A stretch of DNA of 64,000 bases from Octopus sinensis (GCF_006345805.1 NW_021835993.1:186001-250000), one strand, 5' to 3'. Positions 1-41,064 are shown, numbered from the stretch's first letter. Numbers and translations are program-made. The notes: a model not told the origin generated them from the letters alone.

Positions 1-540
1 TGAGAGGAAACAAAATTGCATCGACCGGAGGAATCAATCTCCCGAACTTGAGGAATCTGTACTTGGTATTTGAAGGGTTCCAATGTAGGCTGCCAACAGA
101 CTGACTGACCTGACCGACGTGGATTGTCTTTCCAGTTTGCAGACCCTCCATCTGAGGGACAACAGTCAACTGAGCAACTTGAATGGATTGTCGGGGTCAC
201 TCTCTTCTCTCCATACCCTCAATTTGCGGTTTGCTCGAATGTTCATGTCAGATCGACTGACGTGTCCACTTTCGCAGAAATAGTCAAATTGGAACAGCTT
301 AGAGCACTAAAAAAACTAACGCTTAGCGGTACCCCAAACTTGTTTATTTTCAGAGACCCCAATCGCAAGCGAGCCTACTTACCGTGCGGAAGTCCTCTCC
401 TACATCAAGAGTCTTGCGACGTTGGACAAAGACAATATAACCGAGGACGAGGTTTTGGAAGCCCAGGAAATCAGGAATCTGAGAATGGAGGAGGACGCTC
501 TCTCAGAAGTCATAATATTTCTTTATTTAGTTAGACCGAG
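1..540 (+). CDS. LRRC23: LRR protein, LRRC23-like (3' part; 5' end outside window; 3' end approximate)
   Basis: Removing mini-introns at 66-88 (23 nt), 229-251 (23 nt) and 329-353 (25 nt) gives LRGNKI..NLRNLYL-AANRL..LQTLHLRDN..LHTLNLR-STDV..LKKLTLS-ETPIASEPTYRAEVLSYIKSLATLDKDNITEDEVLEAQEIR. This is SDS22-type LRRs plus an LRR cap resembling LRRC23. Confidence 0.6.
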
Positions 541-1330
541 CCACCTAAGGACATTGAGGCATGACACATTCTCAAATCAAACTAACACGTTTTAAAGTAA
601 TAAAATTAGTTCAGTTGAGGAGAGTCCCCTTTTGAAGAAAGGAAACGTTCTCCTTCAATTAGTAGTGGCCCACACTTGGTCATAAACAGGTCAATTAATT
701 AGTCTTTTGATGAGACAAATCAAAGCATTTGTTTACACTTGTATTATATTGTTCAGATTAAGGTTATTTATGATTGTTCTAATTATTCGAGTTGTTCTTA
801 GAATTAATTTGAATTGACGTTAATTTATTTGTTGGAATAATATATAATGACTCATAAAAATGGATCAGCTAATAAAATTAATGCAAATTCCATTAATTAT
901 ACATTTTAATTATGTGTCGATCTTTGTAATTACAATTTGAGATTTGCTGTAGGTCAGGTGATAAAGAGACCATTTTCTGGCACATTGGTTTCGTGACATT
1001 GTGAATTTATCGCCCAATTATGGTTGTCTAGCAATACCCAAAACAATGCCCGAATTTTATAATATCAAGGAATCGAGCCGTCAATCAGTCTGCTTCCGCA
1101 AACCGCATGGGAGTTACTGAATATTGGTTTATGGTTTCGATTTGGCAAAAGCAACCCTCATTTGAGGAGAGAAGCGGAAGGCATCAATTCATGATTAATT
1201 GGAAACATTTCAAAGAAAACTCGCATTGTCGTGCTGTCAATACATTGCCATTGGCGTTAATTGCGTTTCTCGCTTTCGAATAAGCACTCTGCGCGTTCGC
1301 GTGATTTGAATATTGTTTTTTCTTCCTCTC

Positions 1331-3930
1331 ATGTGGTATATCTTTCTCCTCTGTCCTGGTTTCTCTACGGCAGTCCTAGTCTACTCCGTCCGGGAGGAGT
1401 TGCCAGTCGGCACCGTCATAGGCAATGTCTTTGAGGATCTTCGACTCGAAAATTCAGAATCTAGCCAATTAACATATGGAATATTCGAGAACTCTGCGGC
1501 AGGAGATCTTTTTGAAATCGACAAAACTGGCAATTTGATTACACTGGAAAGAATCGACCGGGAAGGAGTTTGTTCAGGATCTGCTGACGAATGTTTTGTT
1601 TTTCTTAGAGTTCTCATCGGTTTTTCGAATGGCAGGACCAACATTGCCGATTTAAAGGTGAAGATAACGGATATAAACGACAACAACCCGACTTTCGACC
1701 CTCCCTCCCTTACTGTTGATGTCCTAGAGTCGTCTAATATTGGGGAATTGATCCCAATCAAGTCCGCTGAGGATCGTGACTCCAAAGAATATGGAATCAC
1801 GGAGTACAGAATTCTGAACAAATCAGAAATTCCATTTTCTCTGAAAAAGAGGGAAACTCATTTATATTTGGAGTTGTTGCAGAAACTTGACCGTGAATCT
1901 CATCAGTCTTACTTTTTCGAAATTGTCGCCCAGGACAGTGGAGGGCAAGTGGGAGTGTTGAACGTGACGGTTAATATTTTGGACGAGAATGACAATGTCC
2001 CCACTTTTGTCCGCCAGATTTTCACGTTTTATGTTTCGGAAAACGCGCCTGTGGGGTATGTCGTAGGCCGAGTCGAGGCCACGGACCCCGATGAAGGAAT
2101 AAACGCACTCATTCACTACAAAGTCGACTCTCGTGCCAACCCGAAAGTTGCAAAATTTTTCCAAGTCGATCAAAACTCTGGGAAGGTGATTTTATCGGCA
2201 AGACTCGACTACGAGAAGATAAACTACTTTGAATTTCCAGTGGTGGCCTACAATCCTACGAAAAGTGGGATGCAGGCCACAGCATACATTTCTGTGTTCG
2301 TGGTCGATTTCAACGACAACAAGCCCCAGATTACCCTTCTTGGGAGCAGCACTCTTTCTGTCGCAGAAAATAGTCCAGATGGGACTGTTATCGGGAATTT
2401 GTTTGTTTCGGATGCCGACTCTGACTCAAATGGGCAATTCGAATGCACCGTCAACGACAATCGATTTAAACTAGCAACTTCAAGATCTGGAGGACTCTTG
2501 CTTATAAAACGTGGCACTTTAGACAGAGAAGAGTCGGATAAAATCGAAATGTTAATAATTTGTCAAGACAAAGGTGTACCTACTTTATTCTCTTCTGAAA
2601 AGCTTGTGATTGAAATATTGGACTCGAACGACAATCCGCCAGTATTTGAACAAGCCTCTTATACTTGCTACGTAATCGAAAATGCAATTATTCAAAATGC
2701 AATTCTCAATGTAAAGGCGACAGACATTGATGCAGGAGTAAATGGAGAAATCAAATATTTTCTGAAGAATGGGACTCAATTCGGTTTTTCGATTGACCCA
2801 GACAGCGGGGATGTCTATCTCGGAACAAGTCTCGATCGGGAGTCACAGTCTTCCTACAGTCTAGAGGTGGTAGCAGTCGACGGAGGAGTGCCGCAGTTGT
2901 CTGCCTCCGTCATTCTACAAGTGTGGGTGGTTGATCAAAATGATTCGCCACCCGAGTTCGAAAGGCGCGAGTACTATTTCCGCGTCTTGAAAAATACACC
3001 AATCGGAGAGAAAATTGGCTCAATATTTGCATTGGATCCTGATTTGAATTCCCAGACCGAATATTCGATTGATTCTGCTTACTTCCAAGTGGACAAAAAC
3101 ACAGGAACTATTTATTTGAACAGGCCTCTCCGCAAGGCCTTCTCACATGAAGCAACAATAATTGCGAAGGACGTCGACAAACCCAATTTGATGGACACTG
3201 CCAAAATCGTAGTAAATGTGTTCGAAGAGAATCCTCCCGAAATACTGTTTCCCAATTCCCAGCAAAATCATTTTCCCCTGAACTGTCGTGCCTCGGTCGG
3301 CACCCAAATATTTCGAATTACAATACGTGACCCGATTCTGGGCCCACTTACTTATGAAATTGACGAACCTGAATATTTTTCAGTAAACAAAACAGGTTCA
3401 GTCAGGCTGGCAAAAAGTCTGGACTTTGTGGGTGCTGTCGAATTCTCCATTAAAGTGACCGACAGTGGAATTCCTCCGCTATTCTCTATAACCAATGCAA
3501 CTGTCCAAGTTATGTGCGAGACGCCATTTCTCTCCACAAATTCACTCAACCTGATGGCGGGGATCCTCACGATTATTGTTTTCGGAATGGTGATTCTCGT
3601 CCTTGTGTTTTTACGGAAAAATGCGATTAACAAAAAACCCAGTGAAATGACGAGTTTCCTTGCCACTCAAACTCCGCAATTTCCAGTTGTCAGACTGCAA
3701 ATATTTTAGATTTTGATTGACAACGGGGATGTCGGAAGAAACCAAAAAACCAAACTAAATTTGCCCAAAAAATCGGAAATAGGTATTTGCTCATTTTAGT
3801 TTCATGCAACACCTGATTTATGTCCCAATTAGTTATAGTGCATTAATAATGTGTATTTCATGTTTGGCAGATCTTCAACTGGAGTCGTGGACCAGGAAAA
3901 AGGGAGAAATTTTAAAATCTGTGATCGTTT
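1331..3930 (+). CDS. Protocadherin with 7 cadherin repeats, a TM helix and a short spliced cytoplasmic tail (3' end uncertain)
   Basis: Signal peptide, repeated DxNDNxPxF, LDRE and AxDxD motifs, and TM segment LMAGILTIIVFGMVILVLVFL. Ectodomain and TM lie in one ~2.35-kb exon. Probable mini-intron near 3686-3709. Confidence 0.95.
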
Positions 3931-4238
3931 AATTTGAAAATCATTTTATTTTGAAATTAATAAAATCGATGGCGATAGGGCTTTAATGCAATGAGTTGAT
4001 ACGTGTTTGTTTATATTCAGTGTTTGTTATCACAAATAACTGGATACATAAATAAACCCCATCCTTATATTGGGACTTGCTGTTATTTTGCGTAACTACT
4101 CAGATTTACCTTTTCGTGATACAAAAAACCGGACTCCAACTTTTGTAATATTTTTTGTAATTGAATTTATTAATATTTCACTAAAGTCTAAAAACAATTA
4201 TTTAAAAAATAATACTTAATAAAATAAATGACTAAATA

Positions 4239-6046
4239 ATGAAGTTGTGTTTTGTGTCTTCCTTATTATCGAATAATAAAATTGTGTTTTTTAATTTAAA
4301 CATTTCAGACCAATTTACGACATCGTTGTTTTAGCCAAAAAAGCAACAGAGCTACGGTTTTCTCAGGATTGTTAACCAAAAGAAACTTATCCGTGGGAAT
4401 CATTTGTGGAACACTCGGAATTGTGTGGGCCTACAACGATGTTATTCAAAATTATATTAATTCTGACTATTTGAACAACACCCCGCTTGCAAAACTCCCC
4501 ATTAACAAATCAATCGACAAAAGTGGACTTCTCCACGAAAAAACTCAGGAAATATCACGTGAGGAGCTCAATTCAGTGAGTCTGAGTATATCCGAGGCCG
4601 AGGATTCAGTGGCCTGCCTCGATGACCACAACGAAGCCTACAAAAACATTCTCATGGACGATCCAAATATCAAGGATTTGGTGAGAGTTTTGAGGAATCG
4701 TCGATCTGCCATGACTGAGGCAGCGGGGAAACTCAAAGCTGCCAGGTCCAGTCACATATTTTGTTGTAGGATTTGCTGTGCCAATTACTCGACCAATGGG
4801 GAGAAATGTGGGGGAGTTGATATTTCGGGACTCCAAGACAAACTGGCCACCATTCAGCAGTCGGTCTCCCCTTTCAATTTTATTTTAGTTTGTGAAAATA
4901 AGGTCAGATGGGATTGAGTTGGAAAACAAGTTATCGCAAAAGTCGAGGGAATATTTGTGTTCTGTCATAAATGGGAGTCATCCAGACTCTTCTCTTGTGG
5001 AAGAGGCCCTCCAATTAATGTTGAGTCTGCAAATCCAACAATCCACCGATGGCTGCACTGTGGAGTCCAGACTGGCCAGCAAATTAGCAAAAGACGCCAG
5101 AAATCTAAAAAACGAGCGAGACAAGTCACTAAGAAGAGTGAATGAACGGGAGGTGGAGTGTTTCAGTCAAAGAAGGAAGGAATTGACCGAACAAGCAGAT
5201 TTCGCGTTCAGAAAGGATTTGAGAGAAATGAAAGAGGAGATAGAAAGTTCAGCCAATGCACAACTGCCCATAACTCTACAAAGAGAAGAAATCACTCTGA
5301 GGAAATCAGGGGAGGTGTATTTACAGGATCGGGCGTCTGAACGGGATGAGTTGTGTAAAAATGAATTGAATGGGAGAGAAAGCCTATTGGACGGGAGGCA
5401 TCTCTCATGGCAGGTGATGAGGCAGTTTTGTTATACCAGAGAGGGCTCGAATGAGAGGTGAGACAATTGACTGGCTCAAATTGACGGGGATATGCAGCAG
5501 GGCTATTAGGGGGTTGCACTTTGATAGTGAGGTCTATGAATTGGTCCACTTGGGTTTGATATTGCAGGCACTCGAGGAAATGGTTAATGCAACGTCGGAC
5601 GTCCCTTTTGCCGACACTGTTCTGAGGTCGATTGGGCCAGAACTGCACACTTATAAAGAGGTGGAGGAAAGGTAGTTCGTGTGGAGTAAACTTGTAGTTT
5701 CTGGGCCAAGAGTAGAGCTAGTTGGAGAGTTGCTTCACTAAATACGAGATTTGGGTTTTTTGAGTATATGATGGGGGTGGTGGAGTCATTCATTGTGGTG
5801 GAGTATATCACGGATGTGGAAAATGTAAGGGAAGGGGACATGTATGGGCATCTGGCATGTGCTAGAGAGTGCATGAGGAGGGGAGATATTGCGAGTGCAG
5901 TCAGGATATCAGGAAATATGATAGGGGAGGCTGGGTTTGTCATGGCTCCTTGGGTTGAGCAGGCTGTTAAGTTTCTGGAGAGGAAGCAAGCACTGACTAA
6001 TATTAATGCATATGCTCGAATGTGTGTGCTGAGTACTGTTGATTGA
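4239..6046 (+). CDS. IMMT: MICOS subunit Mic60 / mitofilin
   Basis: ATG at 4239; intron 4284-4308 joins a targeting-like N-terminus in frame to the TM segment LSVGIICGTLGIVWAY. A long coiled coil follows, then a C-terminal mitofilin-like domain (ARECMRRGDIASAVR..WVEQAVKFLERKQAL). Several 24-25 nt introns. Confidence 0.8.
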
Positions 6047-6299
6047 TATATTTTATTCCTTTCTTTTAATATACTAATTCTCCATGACCCACTCTGAAAA
6101 CAGTCGAACACGGCTTAAATCAAATCTCACGGAGATAAGAGGTGGAAATTAAATGCACAATAACTTAAAATGATCAAATCTAGCATTTAAAATTGTAAAA
6201 TCTATAACTTGAAATAATGATCAATCACAGCCCGCTGTGTATTGAGTGGTACCTTCCGCGTAACACGGGTCGACATTGACTCTACTTTTTTGTGTCTTT

Positions 6300-7680
6300 G
6301 ATAATTCCGTCAAATCACTTGCTAAATTTTTTTTAATTATCTTAAGTTGAATGTGTCAAGACATTCTGCCAGCACTCTTTTTGCATTTCCATATTGCAAA
6401 TAATTTTATCTTCAAATCTTTCAATTTTTTCGGATTTTGCAATAATTTAGTCTTCATCATCGACCAATCATGCTTAATCGGATATCGATGCTTATTGGCA
6501 CCGATCGTGTCAAGCGTATAATTTTCTGTTAGGAATCTTTTTTGGCCATCCTAGGCCCAGTAGATTGCGTAGTTGTTTTCTGTGAAACGTGTCCATTTTA
6601 TGTAATGTACATTGCAGAGGTTAAAACTCTCCGGTACATCATGTTCTCACTATCACCAAGTAATGATCCTAATTTCTTTTTTTTCCTCCAATTTTCATCA
6701 ATATATTTCGATTCCTTTGCGATTCTTACATGTTCAGTCTTTTCTTGATTAACGTGCAAACACCATCTCTCAAATTCGTTTGGAATTTTCTTCAAAACAG
6801 ATGCAAGTCCCTGATCATTTTCTGGCACAAAGTCTATGTCGTCTGCATATACAATTTCCATCGGCATCGATCCTTCTTACTTTGTTCTGAGATCTCTCAG
6901 TGCTGTCTTCGGTTATACTATTAATAGAACCGGAGATAGGGTTCCCCTGAGGTGTTCCAATTGTTGTTTCGATAGGATTTGATAACTCGGTTGTTTAATT
7001 TTTTAATTGCCAAGTCAGTTTCCTTTGGGGATATTGCTAAGTTCAGACTTCTTGGTGATTTGTCAAACGGTTCAAGGGTCGAGGTATCATTCTTGTTTAA
7101 AAGGCCTGAAAAATATTCGTCAATAATCCCAGTTTTTTCTTTATTATCCAATACATTTCTTCCTTGACTGTCGTGTACACTCCTTTCTTAGGTTGCACTC
7201 CTCTCTGCAAAAGGCGAGCAGCACGAAACATTTTCGTTCCGTATCTCATCCTCTCAATTTCACTGACACTTTCATGTATTTTTCTGACATAAATTTCCTT
7301 CTTCCTTTTTTGATCTTCCTGACAGCACAACTCCTTTCTCTTCGTAGCACGTTATAAGTATCAGGATCTGTGGTAGATTCCATTTTGAGTCTTATTTTCT
7401 TCTGTTTATCGGATAAAAGTTCAATTTCCTTATCGAATACTCCTTTGAATCCGGACGGTTTTTTTCCCAAGCACATATTTTCTTTATTCCTTCAGCCACT
7501 GAATCCCAAACCACTGCAGGGGGATTTTCCATATTTACGTTCATAATTTCTTTCTTAATTGCCATACAATAATTTTCGCGAGTCTTCTCACATAAACATA
7601 ATTGTTCCACCATAAAACGGTTTGTACTGATTTTTTTCTTTTGAACTCCATCTATTCCAAAGTATCTTTTCATTCTGAAT
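6300..7680 (-). mobile_element. Decayed APE-type (RTE-like) non-LTR retrotransposon: linker plus RT, internally deleted
   Basis: EIVYADDIDF..LHVNQEKTE..WRKKKKLGSLLGD in ORF 6598-6867. Upstream linker fragments (7097-7673) with many stops and frameshifts. Confidence 0.8.
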
Positions 7681-7689
7681 CTTACAACA

Positions 7690-8000
7690 AGCAGTTTATA
7701 ATTTGCCCACCTGAGATCAAAACACCCGAATCTGTGTCTTGCACGCTCAACCCATCAGAAGATGAAATCAACTTCTCAATTCAATCTTTTGGCAAAAGCA
7801 CCTGCGGCGGACTTGATGGCCTCCGCCCGGGGCACATCAAGAACTTCACCTCTCCCTCAACTGGCGAGGCAGGCAACTCTCTGATATCCGCTATAGCCGC
7901 TCTAATCGGCAAGATACTGAACGGGGATATCCCGCCGGATTGGACAGAGGGGACGGCAAACGCCCGGATGGGATAACTACCTCCCCATTCCGCTCACCTC
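7690..8000 (+). mobile_element. CRE-clade non-LTR RT fragment
   Basis: SFGKSTCGGLDGLRPGHIKNF..AGNSLISAIAALIGKILNG matches the GSAGGLDGLRPQHLKD segment typical of CRE RTs. Confidence 0.75.
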
Positions 8001-8099
8001 ATGCTTCATGAAAAACCTGGTACGGGGATCTTGCAAGGTGATTTCCTATTGCCCCAAATTATTTGTTTAGTAAGTAGACATAATTATTCTCGGAATTCA

Positions 8100-8215
8100 A
8101 CCGTTAAAAAAGATAGCTAAACTAATTAATGGCCTCGCGAGACACCCGGCCAGGCTAGCGAATGGCGAAGCCGTTCCCTCGGATCACAGCAATCGACAGA
8201 CGTTCCAGGAGCCCA
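8100..8215 (-). mobile_element. Short 3' end of a CRE element
   Basis: Translates as LLERLSIAVIRGNGFAIR. About 85 bp are nearly identical to 44028-44110. Confidence 0.8.
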
Positions 8216-8845
8216 TGTAGCGGGTAAAGTTAACCCAATCGGCATGGTTGTAGTCGTATGGGGACTGCTTTTCTGAAAGTGGATTTGACTTGGACTTGAC
8301 TATTGACTATGGTCCCTCTCTAAGTCGTAGATTACCTTCGATTAGTCAATGACACCAGGTTAGCAGAGCAAAGAGTCAGGTCGGGAAAAGTAAGTTTGTC
8401 CTTTCTCTTGTGTAGGGTTCTTGTGTTCAAAGACAGATTGATAAGAATGACGAGGTTATCAAGTTGCTCAAGCAGGGACTTTCCTCTCGAGTCAAGTGTT
8501 TGTGACTTAAGCCACTGCGGGTGCTTTGCATTCAGGTTCCCGCAAATAAGAAAGTTTTAAGCTTGTCAACCGGGAGGAAATCTGAGTAAAACTTTTCGGG
8601 CATAATCCAATTGGTGGAATGTACATATTGCAAATAAGTAAATTTCCAACTAGAGTAGGTATGGTAATTGCAGAAGCCTCCAGGCATCCGTTTCGGTTAA
8701 GTTTAGCGTTAATGAATGCGGAACTTTCCTGGTAGTTGATATCCTTCTTAATGAGAGTCATAAGACCGGTTCCGCATTCATAAGACTTGTCAGAAAAATT
8801 ACCAGCATCGTTAAAAGTATCGAAGAAACCTCTTACGCAGACCAT
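8216..8845 (-). mobile_element. APE endonuclease fragment of another LINE family
   Basis: GTGLMTLIKKDINY..LEASAITI..LLICNMYIPP, followed by DHSPI-like and YDYNHADW-like motifs. Confidence 0.7.
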
Positions 8846-9216
8846 TTACATTGTTTTTAGGCTTTAATATTTGTTTTAATATTTTAACTAAAATTTTGCG
8901 AGCTTTCTCTCATCATCTTAGGCTCTAAAAATGTCTTTGTTCATTAAGCATGTTATTCCCTCTCAGTTTTGGCGGGTACATTGGTCAAGAGATATATGAT
9001 TCCTGCTTCCGTTTAAAATTTCAAATAACACCAAACATTAAACAAAAAAATAAAGAACATCCAGAAGCTCCAGAAAACAAATTTCTCGGTGCGCTCTCTG
9101 ACAAAAAGAAAGCACCAAAACCAATGACGCAATCGACAATACAACTTGAATGTTTAATCATATCCCTTCTTACCAATAAAAATCCTGAAAATGGAAATTT
9201 TATTTAATAGATATAT

Positions 9217-11266
9217 CTACTCAATCTCGGAGGGTTTCTGATTTAAAAAACACCCACTCAGTGTGAGAGCCGAGAGGAAGAGAATCCCCGATCCAATATA
9301 AAAAGTAGTGGTCACTCCGATAGACTCGACAGATTTGCCTAAAATAAGACAAAGCATCCACCAAATCCAATAATCCCCAAAATGTAGCCAATCCCCTTGA
9401 TAAACATGTGAATTGTCAAGGCGGGTGTGAGTTTCCTTATTCCAAGCACATTGCAGAATATCAGGGAAGGGTTGTAGAAAATTGCACCTAGCAATGACCA
9501 TTTGAAAGTCAAACCATAGCAAAGTCCATACGCCAAACAGACGAGGACCATTGCAGGCAAAGACCCTCTCAGAATGGGCATGAGGAGTAGACTAACAAAT
9601 ATCAAGTAGAATGCCGCCCGGTTATATGAAAACACGTCTACTAATTTCCCGACTATGAAGCCACTGACAAGTCTGGAAACCATTCCACCGATGCCTCAAG
9701 GTAATAATGAGATAATTACCCATAACCGATATGAGGATATCCCCGTGTTTGCAGGTATCGTTTGTAAGCTGAATCATAAATAAATAAGGTATCAAAACGA
9801 CAAAGAACATGATAAAAGAGGCCACGTAGAATCGCACAATAAAATTTGAATTCCAAATGGACCTGTCAAAAAACATATCAGTCCTAGGACGGTTATGGAT
9901 GACATCATCCAAAGAGGGAATATTGATAAGACTGCGTATATCATGTTCGTTGTGAATAACTCCCATTTCCTGTAAACTTTGTCGACTTGCAACGTGAAAA
10001 AGTTCCAATTTGTTAAAAGGACTCAACACAATTCGTTTAATCCACTTCACTAATAGTTTTTTGGCCTTTTCTGTCACGCACTCAGAAACATTCTTTTGGA
10101 CAAATTTTGTTCTAAACAAATCGCCTTCACTTGCACTGATTAATGACTTGTCCGCCACTTTGTTCTCCATCAGGCGAATGAGTCGACTTAACAGTTCTGG
10201 GAAGTTGTTGCTGTCTCGCCGTATTGCTCTTATTTTGCTGTACGTACTTCCCTCACATGTGGTAGAGATGGCAGTAAGACAAGAAATGTTTCCATGAGAA
10301 TATTCCGGCCTTTCCATCTTTTTCTGACAAGTCGTCAGTCCGCTTATGATCTTGTCGGCAATCGATTTGGTAGGTTTAGCGAGGAATGGGTGACTGGGAA
10401 TGTCTCCGAGTGACCAGTGGTATGTCCTACTCTATTTAACTAAAATTCACGTTTGATGTTGAAATGAATTTTCTGTTTCCAGACTTTCAATTGAAGAGGA
10501 GACCAATTTTATTGACTGGTGAGGGGAGAGAATTTCGAGCTGTTTTGCTTGTTCGGGTAGAGAGAGTGGTTTCATTGCGAGAGAGGCAGGAATAGAGAGT
10601 GTTACCAGTGCTGCCACTATGAGAAGAGTGCCAGTCCAGTTATATTTGTGAAGAGCACTCGATAGGAGGACAGGGAAGACACTCGAACCAAAACTAGACC
10701 CCATGCTCGAAAGTCCCAAAGCTATTGGTCTCCGTCGATCAAAATAGAAGCCCACCATGACCTGGGCACTGAGTGATAGTGTGCAGAAAGCAATCCCTAA
10801 CATTTATAAGCATGGCCTCACCCGGAAATATTCCTAGAGTGAAAAACAGGACGACAATATTTGATACAAAATATGAAGAAATAAAGGCCGCAGACGCAAG
10901 AACTGCAGATAGTAAGCAGATCGGCCGCACTCCGAAACGGTCGAGAAGAAATCCAATCAAAGGTCCTGGTATAGGGGGTTGGATCGAACCTGAGGCGTAT
11001 GTGAGGGAGTACATAATCGAAATAATCAAGGATACTGTTGAAAGAGACACATCGAAGGTGGTTTTAATTTTTGGAATTAATACTCCAATTCCACCGAGAA
11101 TTCCGTCCACAATCGTATTGAAAATGAATGCTGCGGACACAATCACCCATCCCCACCCTCCGTCAGGTGGAAGGGGAAGAGATACCATATTTGCTATAAG
11201 TTCCCGTTCTAATTGAAATTCTTCTGGAAACTGCAGCTGTCCAATTTCATCGAACGTGTCTTCCAT
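9217..11266 (-). CDS. Monocarboxylate transporter family (SLC16/MCT) MFS transporter
   Basis: N-terminal PPDGGWGWVIVSAAF, FLLDRFGVR, FYFDRRRPIALGLSSMGSSFG, a large central loop and C-terminal TM segments. Multiple mini-introns. Confidence 0.92.
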
Positions 11267-11619
11267 GATAAATAACAAGAATCGGCTTGCGGCATTATTA
11301 AAAAATTGCATTATTTCAACGTAAAATGGTCGACCGCAAACACGCATGTCCAAGCACGGTCATTGATTAGATAATGAAAGTCGGACCGAAACATCGCTTC
11401 CAGACGCCTGCCACTTCGTACAATCGCCGTGGAGACGAGCGGCGTGATTGGGCCTCAGGAAAAGATGATTTTTCGTCGATCGTGAAGCACATTGGAAAGA
11501 AAACCAATGACTCTCGGGAAACCTGAAGTTCTTGTTAGCTCCCCTCGAGACACTTTTTAGTCTGAGACACATCTTCGTAAGTAAAGATTATTTATCACAA
11601 GTTCTCCGAAATTTAAAAG

Positions 11620-12485
11620 AATTCAGACATGGTCCATCGTATTAAGACTCTCAGTGGTCATGTTGAAGCGTCTGAAGAGACAATTAGCTTGAATCCTCCT
11701 GATCCTCGCATGTGATCGAAAAAATAAAGGCATCATTTTTTGTTATGAGCAGGAGATAGACTTTTTACCTGCTTTCTTTTTTCGCAGTGCTGATCATATT
11801 TTGGAAATTGAAAACTTTTAGCTGATCAAAACTCCAGTCACGTTCTTGTTATTGCCAAAATTAAAAATGCTTCAGGACTAAAAAAACTTTGATAGCATCC
11901 TACAAGCATCAGAACAGATCATGGTTGTTGAGAAGACCTAGAGGGAGAATTACCCATTCAGGTTCCAAAACTTCAAAAAATGATGTTTGGTGAAATGACG
12001 GTAGGTAAATATCCTGTTGAAACAGTTTGTCTAATGAAAAATACAGTGATTGCTACGGAAAATGATTTTAACTATGAAAAATTCTTTTACAAAGACGTAG
12101 CGCGTCGCGTTTTTAAAGATATTTTTTTTTAGGTTTCTATTGCGGCTGTTAAGACAGCTTATACGGAACATGGAAAAGCAGTCATTGCTTTAACAACAAT
12201 TAAGTTCACAGCATGTGTGAGGTTCGCTTTGGTCGTAAGATGCCAATTATTTCCATTACTCCAGAAGAAAGCACCTATCACCAATTGACTTTTTGTTGAG
12301 TACCTGTTCATACTCCTGTTGAAAGTGTAAAACAAAGAATGGCTATAGCAATTTGCTTTGCTCTGCAATATAGAATTCTTCACTACGAAGATCTTATCGT
12401 TGTCACTTTTGACAATCCTTTTAGTGTAAGCGGAACTACCGATATGATACTTGTTGATAAAATTGGAGATGTCCTGGTCCTGGGA
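11620..12485 (+). pseudogene. pyk: Decayed bacterial-type pyruvate kinase (Chlamydiae-like)
   Basis: Collinear broken frames: EQEIDF..RSADHILEI..HVLVIAKIKNASG..NFDSILQAS..QVPKLQKMM..GEMTVGKYPVETV..DFNYEKFF..AVKTAY..MPIISITPEESTYHQL..DLIVVTFDNPFSVSGTTDMILVDKIGDVLV. No introns, many indels. Confidence 0.85.
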
Positions 12486-12489
12486 TTGT

Positions 12490-13310
12490 TACTAAGAATA
12501 GTCTTAGAAGAATTCCGAGAGGCGGCTGGAAATTTATTGCAAGCAAGTACAACGAACGATACTCAAAGAACATAAACTTATCTGATGTCAAGAAACTGAT
12601 GATTCCAAAGAAGGCCGATAAAGCTAGAACGATCACCCAAAAGCAAGAAAACGTAGCACATTTGAACGTGGAAATTTCTAAATTCAAAGCTTGTCTTGAG
12701 GATTTAAATATACAAATTGAGAAAGTGAAAGGTATTCCAAGAGAGTCTCGGAAACTAACTCCTAAGATACAGAGGAAATTCATTAAACTGGAAATAATCC
12801 AAGTGCTAAATTCGGCATTTATTATATTATTAAGTCTACTCCCCATAGAAGCATCGAGAAGATTTCGCAATCACCGTATCTGTCCTTAACTTATAAAATT
12901 AGGACTAATTCTAACTGAGTTGAAGCTACGGAAAAAAATGGGAATCACTTTCAAGGTCGAGGTCGAGAAATGCCACAAATACGATCTATTGGCAGGGGAG
13001 ATGTCCATTCTTTACGACGCTCAAGTGAAAATAATTTCACTGATTTTGACTTGGGACGGGCTCGTTTCCAAGTTTTTTAAGAACTACATTGAAAAGTTGG
13101 CTATCGAAGACGGAACTCAAACTTATATACAGTCAGTTGTGTTGAAGAAAATACTGGAGAGCATGATTGTTGAGCACAGGCACGGGATCAGAATCACTGT
13201 TGAGGAGATAATGGATGTTATTTATTTATTTATTAAATCACCAAGACCACGGTAAAAACCGAACAAACGTCACGTGATCTTGATGCACTCAACCAGGGAC
13301 CTCATCCTTA
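12490..13310 (+). mobile_element. R4/Dong-like non-LTR element remnant: N-terminal piece fused to the C-terminal REL endonuclease end
   Basis: GIT..VEVEKCHKYDLLAGEM..KIISLILTWDGLVSKF..QTYIQSVVLKKILESM. The RT portion is deleted. Confidence 0.75.
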
Positions 13311-13399
13311 TGTTAAAAATAATTTATATATTTTCTTATTAGTAATTATAAATTGAAAATCCAGTTAAGTATTCATTTGTTTTTATATAAAATTCCTCG

Positions 13400-14440
13400 G
13401 ATTTTCTTGTTTTTATTGAGCGGATTAAAACTTAGATTAAAATATTTGTAATTACCTTCTATGAAAATGATGATAAGAAGCGAAACAGCAACCGATGAGC
13501 CCAAAAATATATAAAAATCTACAATTTCATTTAATTAAACAGACATTTAATTTCTACTTTATTTTTTTTCTGTGGTGTTTTCATTGAATCTGGATCCGTT
13601 ATCTCTAGTGAACTAATATTTTGTTTCCATTCCATCAGTTCTGATCCGATTCTGTATAAGGCGATTTCACCATCTTCGTTCTCAGGAAGATATTCTCCAT
13701 GTCTCTCGAAGGATTTATTTATATAATAAATTTCCGTTGGTCCGTTAGGTAGTTTGAATTCTAAGGATAGATAAATTTCTTCTAATTTCGAATTCCATAA
13801 TTCTATAGAAACGGGATCTAATTATGAGTATAGAAATGTATCACAATCTTCGATTTCTTTACAAAGTGCGTAGTCGTCGATATAAATACAGACACGAGCC
13901 AACCTGAAATCATAGTCCATTGTTTCCACGTAGAAATTAAAAAAATTGTTTTGATAGTAGACAATTTCGAGTTTTTTTAGAACATAAGGAAAAACTATTT
14001 TTAATCTTGTATAAAATACCAAAATATAACTTGGCGTAATTTACAGATATCCAATATCTGAACACAAAATTATCAGCTTCTTCAATTTTGACTGTATTAC
14101 TAGGACACACATATGCATATTCAGTTCCGTTTTTCATCTTTAAATTATATATTCAACATATAAACCATTATTATGTTGCCTTTAGTTAAATGTCCAAACA
14201 TTTTCCGTTCAAAACAAGCTTCAAGGCTTCCGTTTTTGTCTATATAAAAATTTGCGTGTGGATATTCTATACTATATTTCCAAATCTCAAACCAGTGTAA
14301 TAAATATGATATTCATTATGACCACAAAACCGTGTTACATACTGATGGGAATTGTGATATAATTCTTCACGTACTTCTAAGAATAAAATTTTATTTAACA
14401 ATTTTAACCATTACGATTAAAACAATTTGGATCATCGAAC
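13400..14440 (-). CDS. Unknown AT-rich, probably single-pass membrane protein gene (boundaries approximate)
   Basis: Consecutive ORF pieces joined by candidate mini-introns; C-terminal hydrophobic helix FYIFLGSSVAVSLLIIIFIE. Confidence 0.4.
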
Positions 14441-14659
14441 ATGTTTTCATTCTCCCAAAACAGTAATTCTAATAAAAACTGATTGTAAACAAATTACCTT
14501 TGTACATAATAGAAGTTGAAAACAGTAATATTACAACAAACATTTTAACAATCACGAGATAAATAAGTTATCTGTACTTTTATAGATGCCATTTTGTTTC
14601 CTAAAACGCGCAACGGTTTCTGCAATATATTCCTGCAATGGTTTCTGCAATAGATCAAT

Positions 14660-22399: not shown

Positions 22400-22830
22400 A
22401 ATTTGAAAAAAAATCTCGTACTATATCAAAAGCAATTAGTCAATTCTGTATTTTTATATAAAAGCCATGCTGACTTTTTATCGAAAATTTCATCTAATGA
22501 TCTCAAAGATGAAAAAATCAGAAATTTTAAACTAGTTGATGTAATACCATTGATAATTGAAGCGTGGTATGAAATTAAAAGAATAACAGTAACGAATTGC
22601 ATTGAAAAAGCATTTAACAATTGGGCAATCAGGACACTCCAGATGACTCTACTTTTAAGGAGGACTCTCCGGTTTCAGATGATGATGAAAATTGTACCTA
22701 TAAAAATTGCAACAACAATGATGAAGAATTTTTGAGAACAATTGAGTCCTATAAAGATTAGGATTAAGAGAATAAAAATGATGAAGATATAGAGAAAATT
22801 GATTTCTGTGATGCAATTAATCCAAAAATG
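22400..22830 (+). mobile_element. pogo/Tigger transposase C-terminal remnant
   Basis: LVDVIPLIIEAWYEIKRITVTNCIEKAF followed by an acidic tail. Confidence 0.6.
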
Positions 22831-22859
22831 TCAATTCCAGAAAAATGTTAACTAAGGTC

Positions 22860-22985
22860 AATAAGAAGAAGAACTGATGGCGATCTTGTTTCCCCTCACT
22901 ATTGCTTGGGACACGTTCTGGAGGAGCCATCTCGTCTCCAGAGGATTGTGTGTTCTCAAAGCCTTGAGACGTCCAATACACTTGA
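22860..22985 (-). mobile_element. Short CRE 3' end
   Basis: Reverse strand reads IGRLKALRTHNPLETRWLLQNVSQAIVRGNKIAISS. Confidence 0.75.
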
Positions 22986-23502
22986 GAAAATTATTTTAAT
23001 TTTTCGTTAAAAATACAATCCACTTTATTGCGAAAAACTCGACAGAAAACCGAAAATTAAAAGATGATACCTTCGATAAAAAATTACGTTAAAAATTGTT
23101 TTTAAATAAGAAAATTCAGATAAAAATCCAAACACAAACATTTCTCACAAAGAAAATGCAAGAGACTACTAAGACTTAACTTCTTGGCAAAATGAACACA
23201 AAATTTCAGACTAACTTTCTTTGAATATTAACTCGAAATGGCCACAGAAATAAAGACCAGTCTCAAATAAAATTTATTTATTTTATTTATTCATAAACCG
23301 TTCAGTAAAACTGGAGATAGACTTATCAGCCTTCCGCTGTAGGTTCGAGATCGTTTGCAGATTTGTTTTGAGATATGATCCCCAGGCAATACAAACATAG
23401 CCTCCGCCAAGTCGGTTTAACCGATCTAAGCGGATACAGTTATATCCCGGGAATGAGGGAGTAAGTGAGGAGAATGTCAATCTGGTTTATTGTCGTCTAG
23501 AT

Positions 23503-24725
23503 CAGCGGTTCTCAAATGCGGCCCCCGGGGCCGCATGCGGCCCGCAGGATTTTTTTTGCGGCCCCTCTAGAGTAACTAACTTTTTTAATTTTTTAATAAT
23601 GTTAAAATTTAATTATTTATTGATTGTTCCAAAGATATAACCGAAAATAGTTTCGATCAATTAATATGGCATCACTGCATAATTCACCAGAAAATCTTAT
23701 CGCCAAGTCCATTAAAATGGAACATGTTTCCAAAAAAGTCGTTAATATCGTTTATTGGATACGCTCAAAAGCGCTCAATCACCGATATTTTAAATCTTTT
23801 TTGGAAGAAGTTGATGCTGAGTATGGAGATGTTATTTTTCATACTGAAGTGAGGTGGTTAAGTCGTTCGAAATGCCTTAATATTTTATTAAAGGTTCTAT
23901 AAATTGCTTCCAGAAATTAAGGAGTTTACCAAAGACAGAGTAATTTTCGATGAACTTTACGATGAAAGATGGATTGCCGATTTGGCTTTTTATGTTGATT
24001 TAACCACGCATTTGTCGGATCTCAATGTTGAATTACAAGGAAAAGGCAAACTCTGTTATCAGGTATATGGATACATTTCTTTGTTTATCGAAAAATTATA
24101 TTTATGGATGACTTCCCTTAAAGAGGGAGATACATCTCATTTTTATTCACTATCTGAAAACAACGAAGGCGCTGCTTATGAAAAATACATATCCATAATT
24201 GGTGATTTAATTAATCAATTTGAAGCACGTTTTGGGGTACATTTATATAAATTTAATTTTTAGAATTTTAAAAAATTCCTTCCTTTAATGAAAATATTCG
24301 CAACTCCATTCAGCGTGGAAATTAAGGATGCGCCTGCAAAGTTTCAACTAGAACTCATTAATTTACAACATGATATAGAACTGGCGGCATTGTTCAAAAA
24401 AAGCGTCCATTATTAATTTTACGAATTAATTCCTCAAGACAAATTCAAAAATATAACACACAATGCATATATGAATATATCAATGTTTGGATCTACTTTT
24501 TATGCGAATCAATATTTAGGAAAATTTAGTCTGAAAATTTAGTTTAAAAAGTTAGTCTGAAATCATTTTCCTAACTCATTACCATCAGCAGTGGCTGCAC
24601 TTCGGATTGCAAGCGAGTTACCGGCTTGGAAAATATAAAAATATATAAAATATTTTTTGTGCGGCCCGCGAAGCTAATCTTAATTATCGATTTGGCCCTT
24701 GAGCTAAAAAGGTTGAGAACCCCTG
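23503..24725 (+). mobile_element. hAT (Charlie/SPIN group) element, internally deleted, with TIRs and TSD
   Basis: Termini CAGCGGTTCTCAA and TTGAGAACCCCTG; perfect 8-bp TSD GTCTAGAT at 23495-23502 and 24726-24733. Transposase reads HTEVRWLS..DLAFYVDLTTHL. Confidence 0.95.
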
Positions 24726-26479
24726 GTCTAGATAATTCCAGCTGGAAAGAGTGAATGGTTCTTTTCTTGAATCCTTTAGGAGCATTCTAGTAACAATGTA
24801 GTTAACAATGTTGTAAAACTTGTATGATTCTAAAACAAAATTATGAAATTCTAAGCAATCATTCGAAGCATAGTTATCAACTGAGTATGCTGAAATATTC
24901 ATAAAATGACTACAGCTTCAAGGACGACACAGTCTAGGGGTGATTGGGAGGAGAGGAGGGAGGGTGGTCAGTGAGGACTTGTATGATCTGAGTGTGTATA
25001 TGTGTGATTGGTATATTCCGACGGTCAATTCATTCGGGATTGAGGAGGAGATGAGAAGTAGGACGAGGGGATGTGTAGTTGTCAGTTCAAGTTCTCACAT
25101 TGGGAGGTTGTGGGGGAGGGGCGTGGAGATGATCGACTGGGTGACAAACATGTGAAGAAAGTTCGGCTGAGGAAGGGATTGGTTACTCAGGAATAGATTG
25201 TCGGGGATCCTAATAAGCAGAGGACGTTGGCTAGAAAAAAATAATTCACTATTTTGTATTCTTCATTATAATTAGATGCAAAAAAAAAATTAGATGCAAG
25301 TGTGCTAATTATGAATAATGGTATTAATATAGCATTTTACGCAGTTAAATCAAACAAAATCTACGTAACTTTCGCGGATTGAAAAAGGACCCAGTATTTT
25401 CTAGAGCTTGTAAACTCTGGCATGGATACATATTGGGCATTCCATCTAACACCTCACGCCAATGGGAATGGGATGATGTCTACAGTAAAGCTATAGTGGA
25501 AATATTGGATCAGCCGCACCCCACTCGTTTCGGTGGACCTGCTAGACCTGAAAATAATGCACCCCTCTTTTAGTCTGGAAGTTTTCTCGATAATAACTAT
25601 GTAAGAATTGGCGAGCAATGTGTATGCGAATTAATGCTTGTTTGGTGATCAACGCCGATGTAGTGCGTATCTTAACGTACTCCTCTTTTAGTCTGGAAAA
25701 TAAAATATGCCATCAAAGTCTAAGCCCCGTTTAGTGTAACAGTGATATTACTAGAATAGCACGCCATTAAGCAACACTGAACACGCTCAACTTGAACACA
25801 AAGCATCTTGGCAAATCAGAGGAACTTAATGAATATTGGACAACTCTCTCAATGCGACGGGGACTTTACCCGAGATAGTTTAAGCAATAAGCTTAGCAGT
25901 AACCTCGTATCAACACTTTGGTGGCATTTAAAGAATGGAGGAAAATATAAATATAGCTATAATCTATAAATTTTATATTTCATTATAAATTATTAAGTGC
26001 GTTTAATTAGATTTGCTTAATACTAAATTATCTATATTTAGAAAATCAAGAATAAATTTACAAAAAAATATTATCAAAGTTATAAATGTTTGAGTTGCAA
26101 TTAACAAGAACAATAAAGAAAACTAATATTCAAAGACAGAAACATTGCCATTCCACCTCCTGACAAGATGGGGGTTCTGGCTTAAGGTCACTACATACTA
26201 TTTAGAAAATCTGATCGGAGTTCAAATATTTTCGAATCATTCGCGGATGATGGATATCTACTTCGAACAGCTAAGGAAATTCTCAACAACCATGTGTTAG
26301 TTAGCAGTGTGACCTCTTCCGAAGCTATTCGAACATTTCGGCAAACTTTCTGCTCGGTTTAATGTTTCTCTAAGATAAAGAGTGTTCTAAGTCTTAGAAC
26401 GCCAAAAGAATGCTCCAAAAACTTTAGAATTCTGCTTAAAAAAAGCAAATGAGCATAATAACAAGACACTAAAAGTCAG

Positions 26480-28117
26480 TTATGCAGTGAGTGAACTGGT
26501 TGCTAAGGTGGGGAAGCCACATACAATTGCAGAACGTCTGGTGAAGCCAGCAATGTTGATCTGTGCTAAAGAACTGCTAGGAGAACAGGCTGCCAACATT
26601 CTACAAAAAATCCCATTGTCTAATGACACAGTGAAGAGAAGGCAATTGAAATGGCAGAAAACCTCGAGAAACAGCTTGTGGAAAAATTAAAAGTTTCTAA
26701 GTTCTCACTACAAATTGATGAGACAACAATCAACAATTCTGCCTTATTACTTACTTATGTCCGATATATTGATGCAATGGCAATTCATGAAGAAATGTTA
26801 TTTATAAAAAAGTTGATTGACACACGAAGCGACACTATATATGCGGCTGTTTACGACTATCTGTACGATAATGGGATCCCTCTGTCAAATCTGTTGCAGA
26901 TTGCAACAGACGGTGCCAGCGCTATGACCGGCAAACAGAATGGCTTTGTAGCTAAATTAAAAAAAGTTGCCCCTCATATATTGGCAATTCATTGCATCAT
27001 CCATCGAGAACATCTTTGTGCTAAATCTCTCAATGATGACATGGAACATGCATTGAAAGTCGCTGTTTCAACAGTGAATTTGTCAAAGCCAATGCTTTGC
27101 ATGACCGCCTATTTCAACATTTATGTGAACATGAGGACCACCAGAGACTCCTCATGCACACTGAAGTGAGATGGCTTTCCAAAGGAAATTCCCTAGTTCG
27201 TCTTGCTGAAATGTGGGATATGGTTCTTATTTTTGTTCATGACATGAAAACACAAGCTTGTAGCAAGAAGCAGAAAGATAAAGCTGAGACTTTGTTTTCA
27301 GTGATAAATAACAACGATACAAAGCAAGGATTTTTTACCTGGCTGACTTATTCGCACATGTCAACCAACTGAACATGACACTGCAAGGGCGAAATGCTAA
27401 TCTGATAGATAGTGCTGAGAAAGTACGCTCTTTTTTGAACAAGTTATGTCTCTGGAAGATGCATCTTCAAAAAAATGAATTTGCTTATTTTTGTAATTTT
27501 GCCAAAACTGCTCCGAGCTCAGAAGTAATCGCAAGCTGCACTGACCACTTGAAATGCTTGAAAGAAGATATGACTAGAAGATTTAAAGATATCATCGAAA
27601 TGAATCCGCCTAGTTGGATTATAGATATAGCACATTTTGACGTATTAAGTGAAAAAGACATTGATCCTATTATTGCTGGAGAACTTCTTGAACTGAAGGA
27701 GAACAAAGTATTAATGAAAAATATTGAAAGGGATGGCTTATATGGATGGATGAAAGTAGAATCGATTCATCCATTACTCTTTGAAAAAGTTGTTCCGTTT
27801 GTACTTGGCTTTCCCACCACTTGGTTGGTTGAGACAGGATTTTCTGCAACAAACGATTTACTCACAAAAAAACGCAATCAATTGCAGATTGAGAAGAGAG
27901 GAGACTTACGTTTGAGGTTGAACCAAGATCTGGAAATTCAACTTGACAAATTGATAGATAGACATCAAGAGCAGTGTAGTCATTGACATTTTAATAAGAT
28001 TTTTTATGTTAATAAAAATACTTTTTTGTTAATCAAAGTTTTATTAAAGGCAATGGGCCTGAGATTTTATATGACCCTGAAAATGGGCCTCAGGGAAAAA
28101 AAGGTTGAGAAACACTG
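26480..28117 (+). mobile_element. hAT (Buster/ZBED5-like) transposase, frameshifted, 5' end lost
   Basis: KPHTIAERLVKP, FSLQIDETT, ATDGASAM, HCIIHRE, HTEVRWLSKG and FPTTWLVETGFS motifs. Right terminus GGTTGAGAAACACTG ends at 28117. Confidence 0.92.
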
Positions 28118-40910: not shown

Positions 40911-41064
40911 TAATGTGAGTTTTTATGAGGAGAATAGTAATGCCTAGTCATCTGCAACATTTCCAAACAATCTTAAATTAATGTTAACTTTGATTAGTTT
41001 AGTGTGACTAAGTTTAAAAAGAATTAGTAAAATTAGTTTGGGCAATGATAATTAATTTGAGTTA

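What the first reader, a model, noticed from the sequence alone, without database searches (positions are those of the whole stretch)
11620..12485. Fossil bacterial (Chlamydiae-type) pyruvate kinase embedded in an animal chromosome
Seen: an intron-free, heavily mutated but collinear pyruvate kinase lying between intron-containing host genes. Knowledge: the ending ..VVT..NPFSVSGTTDMILVDKIGDVLV is bacterial-style, leading into a PEP-utilising tail, and is unlike animal PKM. Inference from memory: RSADHILEI, QVPKLQKMM, DFNY..FF, AVKTAY and YHQL resemble enzymes of environmental Chlamydiae (Parachlamydia/Simkania-like). The decay argues for an old endogenous insertion rather than contamination. 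It would be a footprint of an otherwise unrecorded intracellular symbiont.
Basis: partly seen in the sequence, partly recalled or inferred. Interest (0 to 1): 0.75.

Follow-up and report, generated by a model that had tools for sequence, protein, structure and literature searches.

The report
Dead chlamydial pyruvate kinase in octopus
A broken, non-functional piece of a pyruvate kinase gene from a Chlamydia-like bacterium (closest to the family Simkaniaceae) sits between normal genes in an Octopus chromosome, a genomic fossil showing that such a bacterium once had access to the octopus germ line.

Summary
Window 11699-12485 (+) holds a collinear, intron-free, truncated and frame-shifted pyruvate kinase (PK). 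It matches Pfam PK at 6e-13 and PK_C at 3.5e-12.

- **Host:** Octopus. A neighbouring ORF is 99% identical to an O. sinensis protocadherin. The flanks are an SLC16 monocarboxylate-transporter exon and transposon debris.
- **Integration:** the same pseudogene, with the same lesions and junctions, is in an independent O. sinensis assembly. It is therefore not contamination or a chimera.
- **Origin:** bacterial PKs match far better than animal PKM. Eleven of the 13 taxon-named best hits are Chlamydiae. The related bacterial contigs share a chlamydial uvrA-pyk arrangement.
- **Closest relatives:** the fossil forms an exclusive clade (200/200 NJ bootstraps) with two bacterial PKs. One comes from a genome whose PheS is most similar to Simkania. 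The fossil also shares a 1-residue insertion with two Simkaniaceae PKs and one unnamed PK.
- **Damage:** the N-terminal ~165 residues and the C-terminal tail are missing, and 48 core codons are deleted. There are 4 frameshifts and 2 stops. It has lost 37% of near-invariant residues, against 7% or less in real PKs.

It is a dead bacterial DNA insertion: a new example of a known kind.

The parts
11699..12485 (+). Pseudogene of a chlamydial-type pyruvate kinase. It corresponds to residues ~166-472 of a 483-aa PK plus the IGDVLVxG linker of long-form PKs.
   Evidence: Frameshift-aware alignment to P0002: 133/252 codons identical. HMM pieces are collinear over profile positions 170-476 of 477. Pfam PK and PK_C both match.
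11620..11698 (+). It could be a decayed end of the B domain, but the homology is not demonstrable.
   Evidence: hmmsearch E~3.3. The local alignment starts at 11699.
11808..11812 (+). Frameshift 1 (one base missing relative to the PK frame)
   Evidence: codon consuming 2 nt at 11810. The frame change is also seen between the pieces 11693-11818 and 11812-11889.
11876..11882 (+). Frameshift 2 (one extra base, in an A-run)
   Evidence: 4 nt consumed at 11878
11931..11936 (+). Frameshift 3 (one base missing)
   Evidence: 2 nt consumed at 11933
11986..11991 (+). Junction of an in-frame 48-codon deletion. It removes the RKC..KPVxTATQMLESM..RAEVSDVANA..MLS core of the active site (P0002 residues 263-310).
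   Evidence: (profile jumps from 262 to 309)
12130..12132 (+). In-frame stop codon TAG
12218..12223 (+). Frameshift 4 (one base missing)
   Evidence: 2 nt consumed at 12220
12297..12299 (+). In-frame stop codon TGA, next to a 2-codon deletion
12420..12485 (+). FSVSGTTDMILVDKIGDVLVLG: the end of PK_C plus the linker that, in long-form chlamydial PKs, leads into a ~110-aa PEP-utiliser-like tail. Homology stops here.
   Evidence: Tail HMM E=2e-7 for positions 1-23 only. Alignments to four long-form PKs all end at 12485. The motif occurs in 16/122 chlamydial-type PKs and 0/28 other bacteria.
12486..12598 (+). Unassigned spacer. The in-frame 'RIVL..EEFREAAGNLLQ' weakly resembles the tail segment 'rivvis..lkeaaGvvLQ', but not significantly.
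   Evidence: domain 2, score -1.3, about p=0.08 for this single segment
12599..13255 (+). Two ORFs (96 and 111 aa) that look like debris of a retroelement ORF. They bound the fossil on its 3' side.
   Evidence: Pfam gives nothing significant. The retroelement reading rests on my own recollection.
10739..11266 (-). First coding exon of a host SLC16 monocarboxylate-transporter-like gene. Its ATG lies ~430 bp from the fossil, in divergent orientation.
   Evidence: Pfam MFS_1. PDB MCT2 3.3e-13 and MCT1 5.8e-11.
11431..11522 (.). Site where the O. sinensis contig carries 1.6 kb of other sequence in place of these 90 bp (an indel or assembly difference just 5' of the fossil)
   Evidence: There is no PK remnant in that 1.6 kb.

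Best explanation
This is a non-functional fragment of bacterial DNA fixed in the nuclear genome of an Octopus (O. sinensis / O. vulgaris group). It derives from the pyk gene of an intracellular bacterium of the phylum Chlamydiae, most probably a member or close relative of the Simkaniaceae that carried the long form of PK with a C-terminal PEP-utiliser-like tail.

**Shown here**
- It is PK.
- It is of chlamydial type.
- It sits between host genes in two independent assemblies.
- It cannot encode an enzyme. The first ~165 residues and the tail are missing, the active-site core is deleted, and there are 4 frameshifts and 2 stops.
- It has evolved without constraint.

**Inferred**
- DNA released from a chlamydia living in, or next to, germ-line cells was captured at a chromosome break by end-joining. 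This is how Wolbachia DNA enters arthropod and nematode genomes.
- Only about 0.8 kb of one gene was captured or survives.
- It was probably dead on arrival and has since drifted by roughly 0.05-0.2 substitutions per site. That suggests tens of millions of years, but the rate is assumed.
- It now does nothing. At most it is passive sequence in the upstream region of the neighbouring transporter gene.
For: **PK identity:**

**Host and integration**
- ORF 1313-3709 is 99% identical to O. sinensis protocadherin-7-like.
- O. sinensis contig VCDQ01007225.1 is collinear with window 1-11431 (99.3%) and 11522-14615 (98.9%). This includes the whole fossil with the same stops.
- The two sequences differ by about 0.5-1% and a 1.6-kb indel, so they are separate assemblies.

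**Chlamydial origin**
- Named hits are mostly chlamydial.
- The genome scan gives 7e-56 and 1e-45 for Chlamydiae against 1e-26 or weaker for other bacteria.
- Identity is 44-50% to chlamydial-type PKs and 25-36% to other bacteria.
- The diagnostic motifs are present.
- The relatives P0001, P0002 and P0103 lie next to a giant uvrA in bacterial contigs.

**Closest lineage**
- Sister to P0002 in 198/200 bootstraps.
- The clade (fossil, P0002, repaired L084 PK) is exclusive in 200/200.
- The fossil shares 15 rare residues with P0002, against a median of 1 for other PKs.
- A one-residue insertion is shared only with P0002, P0076 (labelled Simkaniaceae) and P0013.
- The PheS of P0002's genome is 69-70% identical to Simkania sp. 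and S. negevensis.

**Loss of function and decay:**

**Single gene only:** no other gene from the related bacterial contigs is found in the window.

**No closer relative:** none exists among 1.84 billion representative proteins; the best is 49-51% identical.
Against: - The trees are neighbour-joining on 264 columns with a decayed, long-branch query. Without P0002, the position inside the chlamydial set is unresolved.
- The family assignment rests on one marker (PheS) of one metagenome-assembled genome, one database label (P0076) and a single indel.
- Two hits inside the chlamydial-type set are labelled 'Verrucomicrobia'. The clade may therefore not be strictly chlamydial, or those bins may be mislabelled.
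- The tail that would prove a long-form donor is absent.
- No reads were examined, and only one 64-kb window of the genome was seen.
- The age estimates disagree by about threefold: ~0.06 from stops and indels, ~0.2 from lost conserved residues.
Confidence: 0.85

Rival explanations
1. The gene was transferred whole, worked for a time as a host gene in an ancestor of octopuses or a wider molluscan group, and this locus is its later decayed and truncated remnant or a dead duplicate.
For: This cannot be excluded from one window. At least one eukaryote assembly (Acytostelium, P0049) carries a chlamydial-type PK on a 502-kb contig, so such genes may persist in eukaryotes.
Against: - No intact or near-identical PK from any mollusc appears among the best 120 hits or among 1.84 billion representatives (best 49-51% identity).
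- There are no introns, signal sequence or host-type features.
- Both ends are missing, and no remnant of them lies nearby.
Confidence: 0.1
2. The donor was not a chlamydia. It was another PVC bacterium, or the piece arrived indirectly through another eukaryote, a parasite or a virus that already carried a chlamydial-type PK.
For: Two 'Verrucomicrobia'-labelled MAG proteins (P0022, P0044) and the Acytostelium protein sit within the same PK set. The closest relatives are unnamed metagenomic sequences.
Against: - The three nearest relatives lie in bacterial contigs with a chlamydia-like uvrA-pyk arrangement.
- P0002's genome has a Simkania-like PheS.
- No plasmid match was found.
- No viral or other foreign genes lie beside the fragment.
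Confidence: 0.05
3. Assembly artefact: bacterial reads from an infected animal were mis-joined to host sequence.
For: None beyond the general frequency of such artefacts.
Against: - Two different assemblies have the same junctions and the same disabling mutations.
- The sequence is truncated, frame-shifted and has lost 37% of invariant residues. A live bacterium's glycolytic gene would not look like this.
- GC is 0.36, like the host, against 0.47-0.52 in related bacterial genes.
Confidence: 0.01

Closest known systems
Nuclear insertions of endosymbiont DNA in animals (for example Wolbachia-derived fragments in insects and filarial nematodes); the comparison is from established knowledge
   Same: - Intron-free bacterial sequence flanked by host genes and transposon debris.
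- Fragmentary, riddled with frameshifts and stops, and free of constraint.
- The donor belongs to an obligately intracellular group.
   Different: - The donor is chlamydial rather than alphaproteobacterial, and the host is a cephalopod.
- Only one ~0.8-kb gene fragment is visible here, not a multi-gene block.
- I found no paper in the held library that describes chlamydial insertions in cephalopods.
PK of the Simkaniaceae-like metagenome genome GCA_028279205.1 (P0002, contig JANQSR010000198.1) and of ENA contig ERZ25070167 ctg247526 (L084, P0103 plus the next ORF)
   Same: - 50% and 49% identity over 264 columns.
- Exclusive clade in 200/200 bootstraps.
- 15 shared rare residues with P0002.
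- A shared one-residue insertion with P0002.
   Different: - Those are intact or nearly intact bacterial genes next to uvrA.
- P0002 is the short form without the IGDVLVRG linker, whereas the L084 PK and the fossil are of the long-form type.
Long-form chlamydial PKs with a C-terminal PEP-utiliser-like tail (for example L003 Chlamydiae MAG OFTM140, 596 aa; L004 Parachlamydiales MAG SSF52, 598 aa; P0076 Simkaniaceae MAG)
   Same: The C-terminal PK_C end and the linker ..SGTTNMMLVESIGDVLVRG.. are conserved in the fossil as ..SGTTDMILVDKIGDVLVLG.
   Different: The ~110-residue tail itself is not detectable downstream of 12485.
Animal PKM/PKLR-type pyruvate kinases
   Same: Same enzyme superfamily and fold (Pfam PK and PK_C).
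   Different: The matches are much weaker (about 4e-11 against 1e-21 for bacterial PKs), and the chlamydial motifs are absent. This is not a decayed host PK paralogue.

Membership tests
Pyruvate kinase (Pfam PF00224 + PF02887) | Sequence match to the barrel domain and the C-terminal alpha/beta domain above the curated cut-offs | tested here: met
   PK 49 bits (cut-off 30) and PK_C 46.9 bits (cut-off 28)
Pyruvate kinase (functional enzyme) | Uninterrupted reading frame with a complete N-terminal barrel half, the B domain and the active-site core (..TATQMLESM..MLSGE..) | tested here: not met
   N-terminal ~165 aa absent, 48-codon core deletion, 4 frameshifts and 2 stops. It is a pseudogene, not an enzyme gene.
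Chlamydial-type PK clade | Best matches and tree position among PKs of Chlamydiae rather than other bacteria or eukaryotes | tested here: met
   A caveat is that 2 'Verrucomicrobia'-labelled MAG proteins lie in the same set.
Chlamydial-type PK clade | Signature motifs (RSxDH, LQKMM, DFxYxxFF, VKTAY, YHQL) | tested here: met
   All are present in the fossil. Each occurs in 64-118 of 122 chlamydial-type PKs and in 0-2 of 28 other bacterial PKs.
Chlamydial-type PK clade | Genomic neighbourhood uvrA-pyk(-rsmE-ybbR-cdaA), as in the related bacterial contigs | tested here: not met
   No neighbour gene is detectable anywhere in the window. This is expected for a single-gene fragment in a host genome.
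Simkaniaceae PK | Exclusive grouping with PKs from genomes assignable to Simkaniaceae | tested here: inconclusive
   - Exclusive clade with P0002 and L084 in 200/200 bootstraps.
- P0002's PheS is closest to Simkania.
- A clade of 6 taxa or fewer that also contains the labelled Simkaniaceae P0076 appears in only 54% of bootstraps.
- The indel is shared with P0002, P0076 and P0013.
- No PK from a cultured Simkaniaceae was available by name.
Long-form PK with PEP-utiliser-like tail | IGDVLVRG-type linker after PK_C | tested here: met
Long-form PK with PEP-utiliser-like tail | The ~110-aa tail domain itself | tested here: not met
   There is no significant match downstream of 12485 in any frame.
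Germ-line (endogenous) bacterial DNA insertion | Bacterial sequence physically continuous with host genes on both sides, reproducibly | tested here: met
   Two assemblies have identical junctions, and there are host genes on both sides.
Germ-line (endogenous) bacterial DNA insertion | Single reads spanning both junctions; presence in germ-line DNA of several individuals or species | not testable with these tools
   No read data or other cephalopod genomes could be reached. Three exact-ORF look-ups in public assemblies found nothing.
Animal PKM-type PK | Closest similarity to metazoan PKs | tested here: not met
   PKM E is about 4e-11 against 1.2e-21 for bacterial PK.

The most novel reading that the evidence does not exclude
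The fragment may be one visible piece of a larger, old set of Simkaniaceae-derived insertions scattered through octopod genomes. That would record a long-lasting, germ-line-associated chlamydial symbiont or pathogen of cephalopods. The association could then be dated by which cephalopod lineages share each insertion.
Probability: 0.2. Interest if true: 0.7.

Novelty: new member of a known kind. Interest (0 to 1): 0.5.

Why it matters
Transfers of bacterial DNA into animal germ lines are well documented for Wolbachia and a few other insect and nematode symbionts. For Chlamydiae and for molluscs they are, as far as I could find, essentially undocumented.

A fixed chlamydial fragment in an octopus chromosome is physical evidence that a Simkaniaceae-like bacterium once lived in or beside octopus germ cells. 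It also gives a locus, the MCT-PK junction, whose presence or absence across cephalopods could date that association.

It has no functional consequence as a gene. For genome annotators it shows that a 'bacterial' hit in a cephalopod assembly need not be contamination.

Tried and rejected
- **Other chlamydial genes in the window.** I ran tblastn with all ORFs of 80 aa or more from two related bacterial contigs. Only PK matched.
- **The missing N-terminal half.** I searched upstream, and in the extra 1.6 kb of the O. sinensis contig, and found nothing.
- **The PEP-utiliser-like tail downstream.** A tail HMM and frameshift-aware alignments to four long-form PKs found only the linker. The 'EEFREAAGNLLQ' resemblance is not significant.
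- **Independent read-level assemblies.** Three look-ups with exact ORF products were not on record.
- **DNA-level search of plasmids.** No match.
- **Rfam scan of the window.** Nothing at gathering thresholds.
- **Literature.** The closest relative's accession is not mentioned in any held paper. No paper on chlamydial transfer into, or chlamydiae of, cephalopods turned up.
- **Target-site duplication.** A 15-nt imperfect direct repeat brackets the fragment (11613-11627 and 12504-12518). By my own rough estimate about nine such pairs are expected by chance in 2.2 kb, the tool found nine families, and there is no poly(A). I therefore treat it as chance.
- **Long-branch attraction as the cause of the fossil+P0002 grouping.** This was a real worry, because either sequence alone is unplaced. 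It is largely answered by the shared rare residues, the shared indel and the 200/200 trio with the repaired L084 PK.
- **Names for the closest relatives via cluster look-up.** None carried a name.

Full report
**1. What is in the sequence**

Joined across frame changes, the translation matches Pfam PK (barrel, E=6.1e-13, profile positions 176-286 of 328) and PK_C (E=3.5e-12, 3-113 of 114). It also matches 313 database pyruvate kinases at E<=1e-5, the best at 3.5e-57.

An HMM built from 23 relatives finds seven collinear pieces on the + strand, covering profile positions 170-476 of 477:
- 11711-11815
- 11812-11889
- 11882-11938
- 11932-12129
- 12133-12285
- 12204-12296
- 12303-12476

A frameshift-aware alignment to the closest protein (P0002) runs from 11699 to 12464, covering residues 166-472 with 133 of 252 codons identical. 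It localises these lesions:
- frameshifts near 11810, 11878, 11933 and 12220
- in-frame stops TAG at 12130-12132 and TGA at 12297-12299
- a 2-codon deletion
- an in-frame 48-codon deletion at about 11988/11989, which removes the active-site core (..KPVxTATQMLESM..RAEVSDVANA..MLS)

The first ~165 residues of PK are missing. No trace of them lies upstream or in the extra sequence of a second assembly. Homology stops exactly at 12485.

**2. The host and the flanks**

ORF 1313-3709 is 99% identical to 'protocadherin-7-like [Octopus sinensis]'. That gene spans 7.9 kb for 963 aa, so it has introns.

On the minus strand, 10739-11266 is the first coding exon of an SLC16 monocarboxylate-transporter-like gene (Pfam MFS_1; PDB MCT2 3.3e-13). 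Its ATG is about 430 bp from the fossil, in divergent orientation.

Downstream, 12599-13255 holds two short ORFs that I take to be retroelement debris. That reading is from my own recollection; Pfam gives nothing significant.

The window also contains reverse-transcriptase and hAT-like fragments, and a 99%-identical 5-kb duplication carrying BTB-Kelch genes. This is ordinary octopus chromosome.

**3. It is integrated, not contamination**

The O. sinensis contig VCDQ01007225.1 (GCA_006345805.1) is collinear with window 1-11431 (99.3%) and 11522-14615 (98.9%). It carries the whole fossil with the same stops and deletion. Within the fossil the two differ by a single substitution and a few small indels, mostly in homopolymer runs.

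The two sequences differ by 0.5-1% and by a 1.6-kb indel at 11431-11522, so they are independent assemblies. A live bacterium's glycolytic gene would not be truncated, frame-shifted and missing its catalytic core. The fragment's GC (0.36) is host-like, whereas related bacterial pyk genes have 0.47-0.52.

**4. Where it came from**

- *Not animal.* Solved structures rank bacterial PKs (Geobacillus 1.2e-21, S. aureus, E. coli PykF) far above animal PKM (about 4e-11).
- *Named hits.* Eleven of the 13 taxon-named proteins among the best 120 are Chlamydiae, Chlamydiales, Chlamydiia, Rhabdochlamydiaceae or Simkaniaceae. The other two are MAG proteins labelled 'Verrucomicrobia'. One more named hit comes from the dictyostelid Acytostelium.
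- *Species-representative genomes.* The best matches are a Chlamydiae MAG (7e-56) and a Parachlamydiales MAG (1e-45). The best non-chlamydial match is 1e-26.
- *Identity.* Over 264 shared columns the fossil is 44-50% identical to chlamydial-type PKs and 25-36% identical to 28 other bacterial PKs.
RSxDH, LQKMM, DFxYxxFF, VKTAY and YHQL each occur in 64-118 of 122 chlamydial-type PKs and in 0-2 of the 28 others.
- *Synteny of relatives.* The relatives P0001, P0002 and P0103 lie in bacterial contigs beside a giant uvrA. I recognise this arrangement from Chlamydia (own knowledge).

**5. Which chlamydiae**

In neighbour-joining trees (Kimura distances, 142 taxa) the fossil is sister to P0002 in 198 of 200 bootstraps. 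Both are long branches, and each alone is unplaced within the set, so I tested for long-branch attraction:
- The fossil shares 15 residues that are rare (<10%) in the set with P0002, against a median of 1 for the other proteins.
- A one-residue insertion (FFYKDV-ARRVF) is shared only with P0002, P0076 (labelled Simkaniaceae) and the unnamed P0013, out of about 120 chlamydial-type PKs.
- I repaired a third relative that is split by a frameshift in a low-coverage contig (L084: P0103 plus the next ORF, 592 aa). With it added, the trio (fossil, P0002, L084) is an exclusive clade in 200 of 200 bootstraps.

The genome that carries P0002 has a PheS 69-70% identical to Simkania sp. and S. negevensis and 68% identical to Simkaniaceae MAGs. 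With P0076 included, on fewer columns, a clade of 6 taxa or fewer holding the fossil, P0002 and P0076 appears in 54% of bootstraps.

My conclusion is chlamydial with high confidence, and Simkaniaceae or near with moderate confidence. An exhaustive HMMER pass over 1.84 billion cluster representatives found nothing closer than 49-51% identity. The donor lineage itself is therefore unsampled.

**6. The tail**

Part of the chlamydial set (for example L003 at 596 aa, L004 at 598 aa, P0076 and L084) has a ~110-residue C-terminal extension that carries a PEP-utiliser Pfam hit. It is entered through the linker ..VESIGDVLVRG...

The fossil ends ..VDKIGDVLVLG, which matches that linker (E=2e-7). The motif occurs in 16 of 122 chlamydial-type PKs and 0 of 28 others. 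Nothing significant follows. The donor gene was therefore of the long form, but the tail was not captured or was later lost.

**7. How decayed, how old**

At the 59 columns that are at least 95% conserved in 112 chlamydial-type PKs, the fossil has lost 22 (37%). Real PKs tested the same way lose a median of 1.7% and at most 6.9%.

That corresponds to about 0.45 replacements per codon, or roughly 0.2 nucleotide substitutions per site without constraint. Two stops and six indels in ~760 bp suggest a lower figure, about 0.06 (my estimate). With an assumed neutral rate of 1-3e-9 per site per year, this gives tens of millions of years up to perhaps 200 million. The conversion is inference only.

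Much of the 50% difference from the nearest relative reflects an unsampled donor rather than decay.

**8. Mechanism**

Shown:
- a single-gene, intron-free, truncated bacterial fragment in host DNA
- no bacterial neighbours
- no poly(A)
- no convincing target-site duplication

Inferred:
- capture of free chlamydial DNA at a germ-line double-strand break by end-joining, as for Wolbachia insertions
- dead on arrival, or soon after
- neutral drift since

It has no plausible function as a gene.

**9. Novelty**

The kind of event, bacterial DNA fossils in animal genomes, is known. The donor phylum and the host class appear to be new. I found no paper on this in the held library, though most subscription literature is not searchable here.

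I rate it a new member of a known kind, with interest 0.5. It would rise if a genome-wide scan shows many fragments of the same lineage, or if the locus proves old and shared among cephalopods.

Noticed in passing
window 39934-45294 and 59098-64000: A segmental duplication ~19 kb apart at 99.0% identity (4.0 kb plus 0.9 kb blocks). Each copy carries a BTB-BACK-Kelch gene (41065-42977 and 60228-62141). The second copy runs off the window end.
   Followed up: partly
window 11431-11522 versus L083 20107-21726: Just 5' of the fossil, the O. sinensis contig has 1.6 kb where the window has 90 bp. The extra sequence contains a protein-kinase-like ORF fragment (..IIDFGSAG..YMAPE..) on the minus strand and no pyruvate-kinase remnant. 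This is either a structural polymorphism or an assembly difference.
   Followed up: partly
About nine such pairs are expected by chance in this 2.2 kb, and there is no poly(A), so it is probably chance.
   Followed up: partly
window 10739-11266 (-): The nearest host gene is a monocarboxylate (pyruvate/lactate-type) transporter homologue. A dead pyruvate kinase sits ~430 bp upstream of its start codon. This looks like a coincidence of function, with no evidence of any link.
   Followed up: no
L001 9496-11299 and L084 3935-5705: In two of the related bacterial contigs the pyk gene itself is split into two overlapping ORFs. The L084 contig name reads 1.99x coverage. These are probably sequencing frameshifts, but they could be pseudogenes in the bacteria.
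   Followed up: partly
P0049 (Acytostelium subglobosum, 502-kb contig): A dictyostelid assembly carries a chlamydial-type PK (35% identical to the fossil). It could be another transfer into a eukaryote or an endosymbiont contig.
   Followed up: no
window 5001-6000 and 57001-58000: Strong local GC skew (0.36 and 0.33). The second lies in a proline-rich repeat ORF (NYMGGPPAYP repeats, 56850-57571, minus strand).
   Followed up: no
window 22403-27986, 34771-35163, 50703-52624: Transposon debris: hAT-like ORFs and a reverse-transcriptase fragment (RVT_1, E=1.6e-14). No Rfam family reaches its gathering threshold anywhere in the window.
   Followed up: partly
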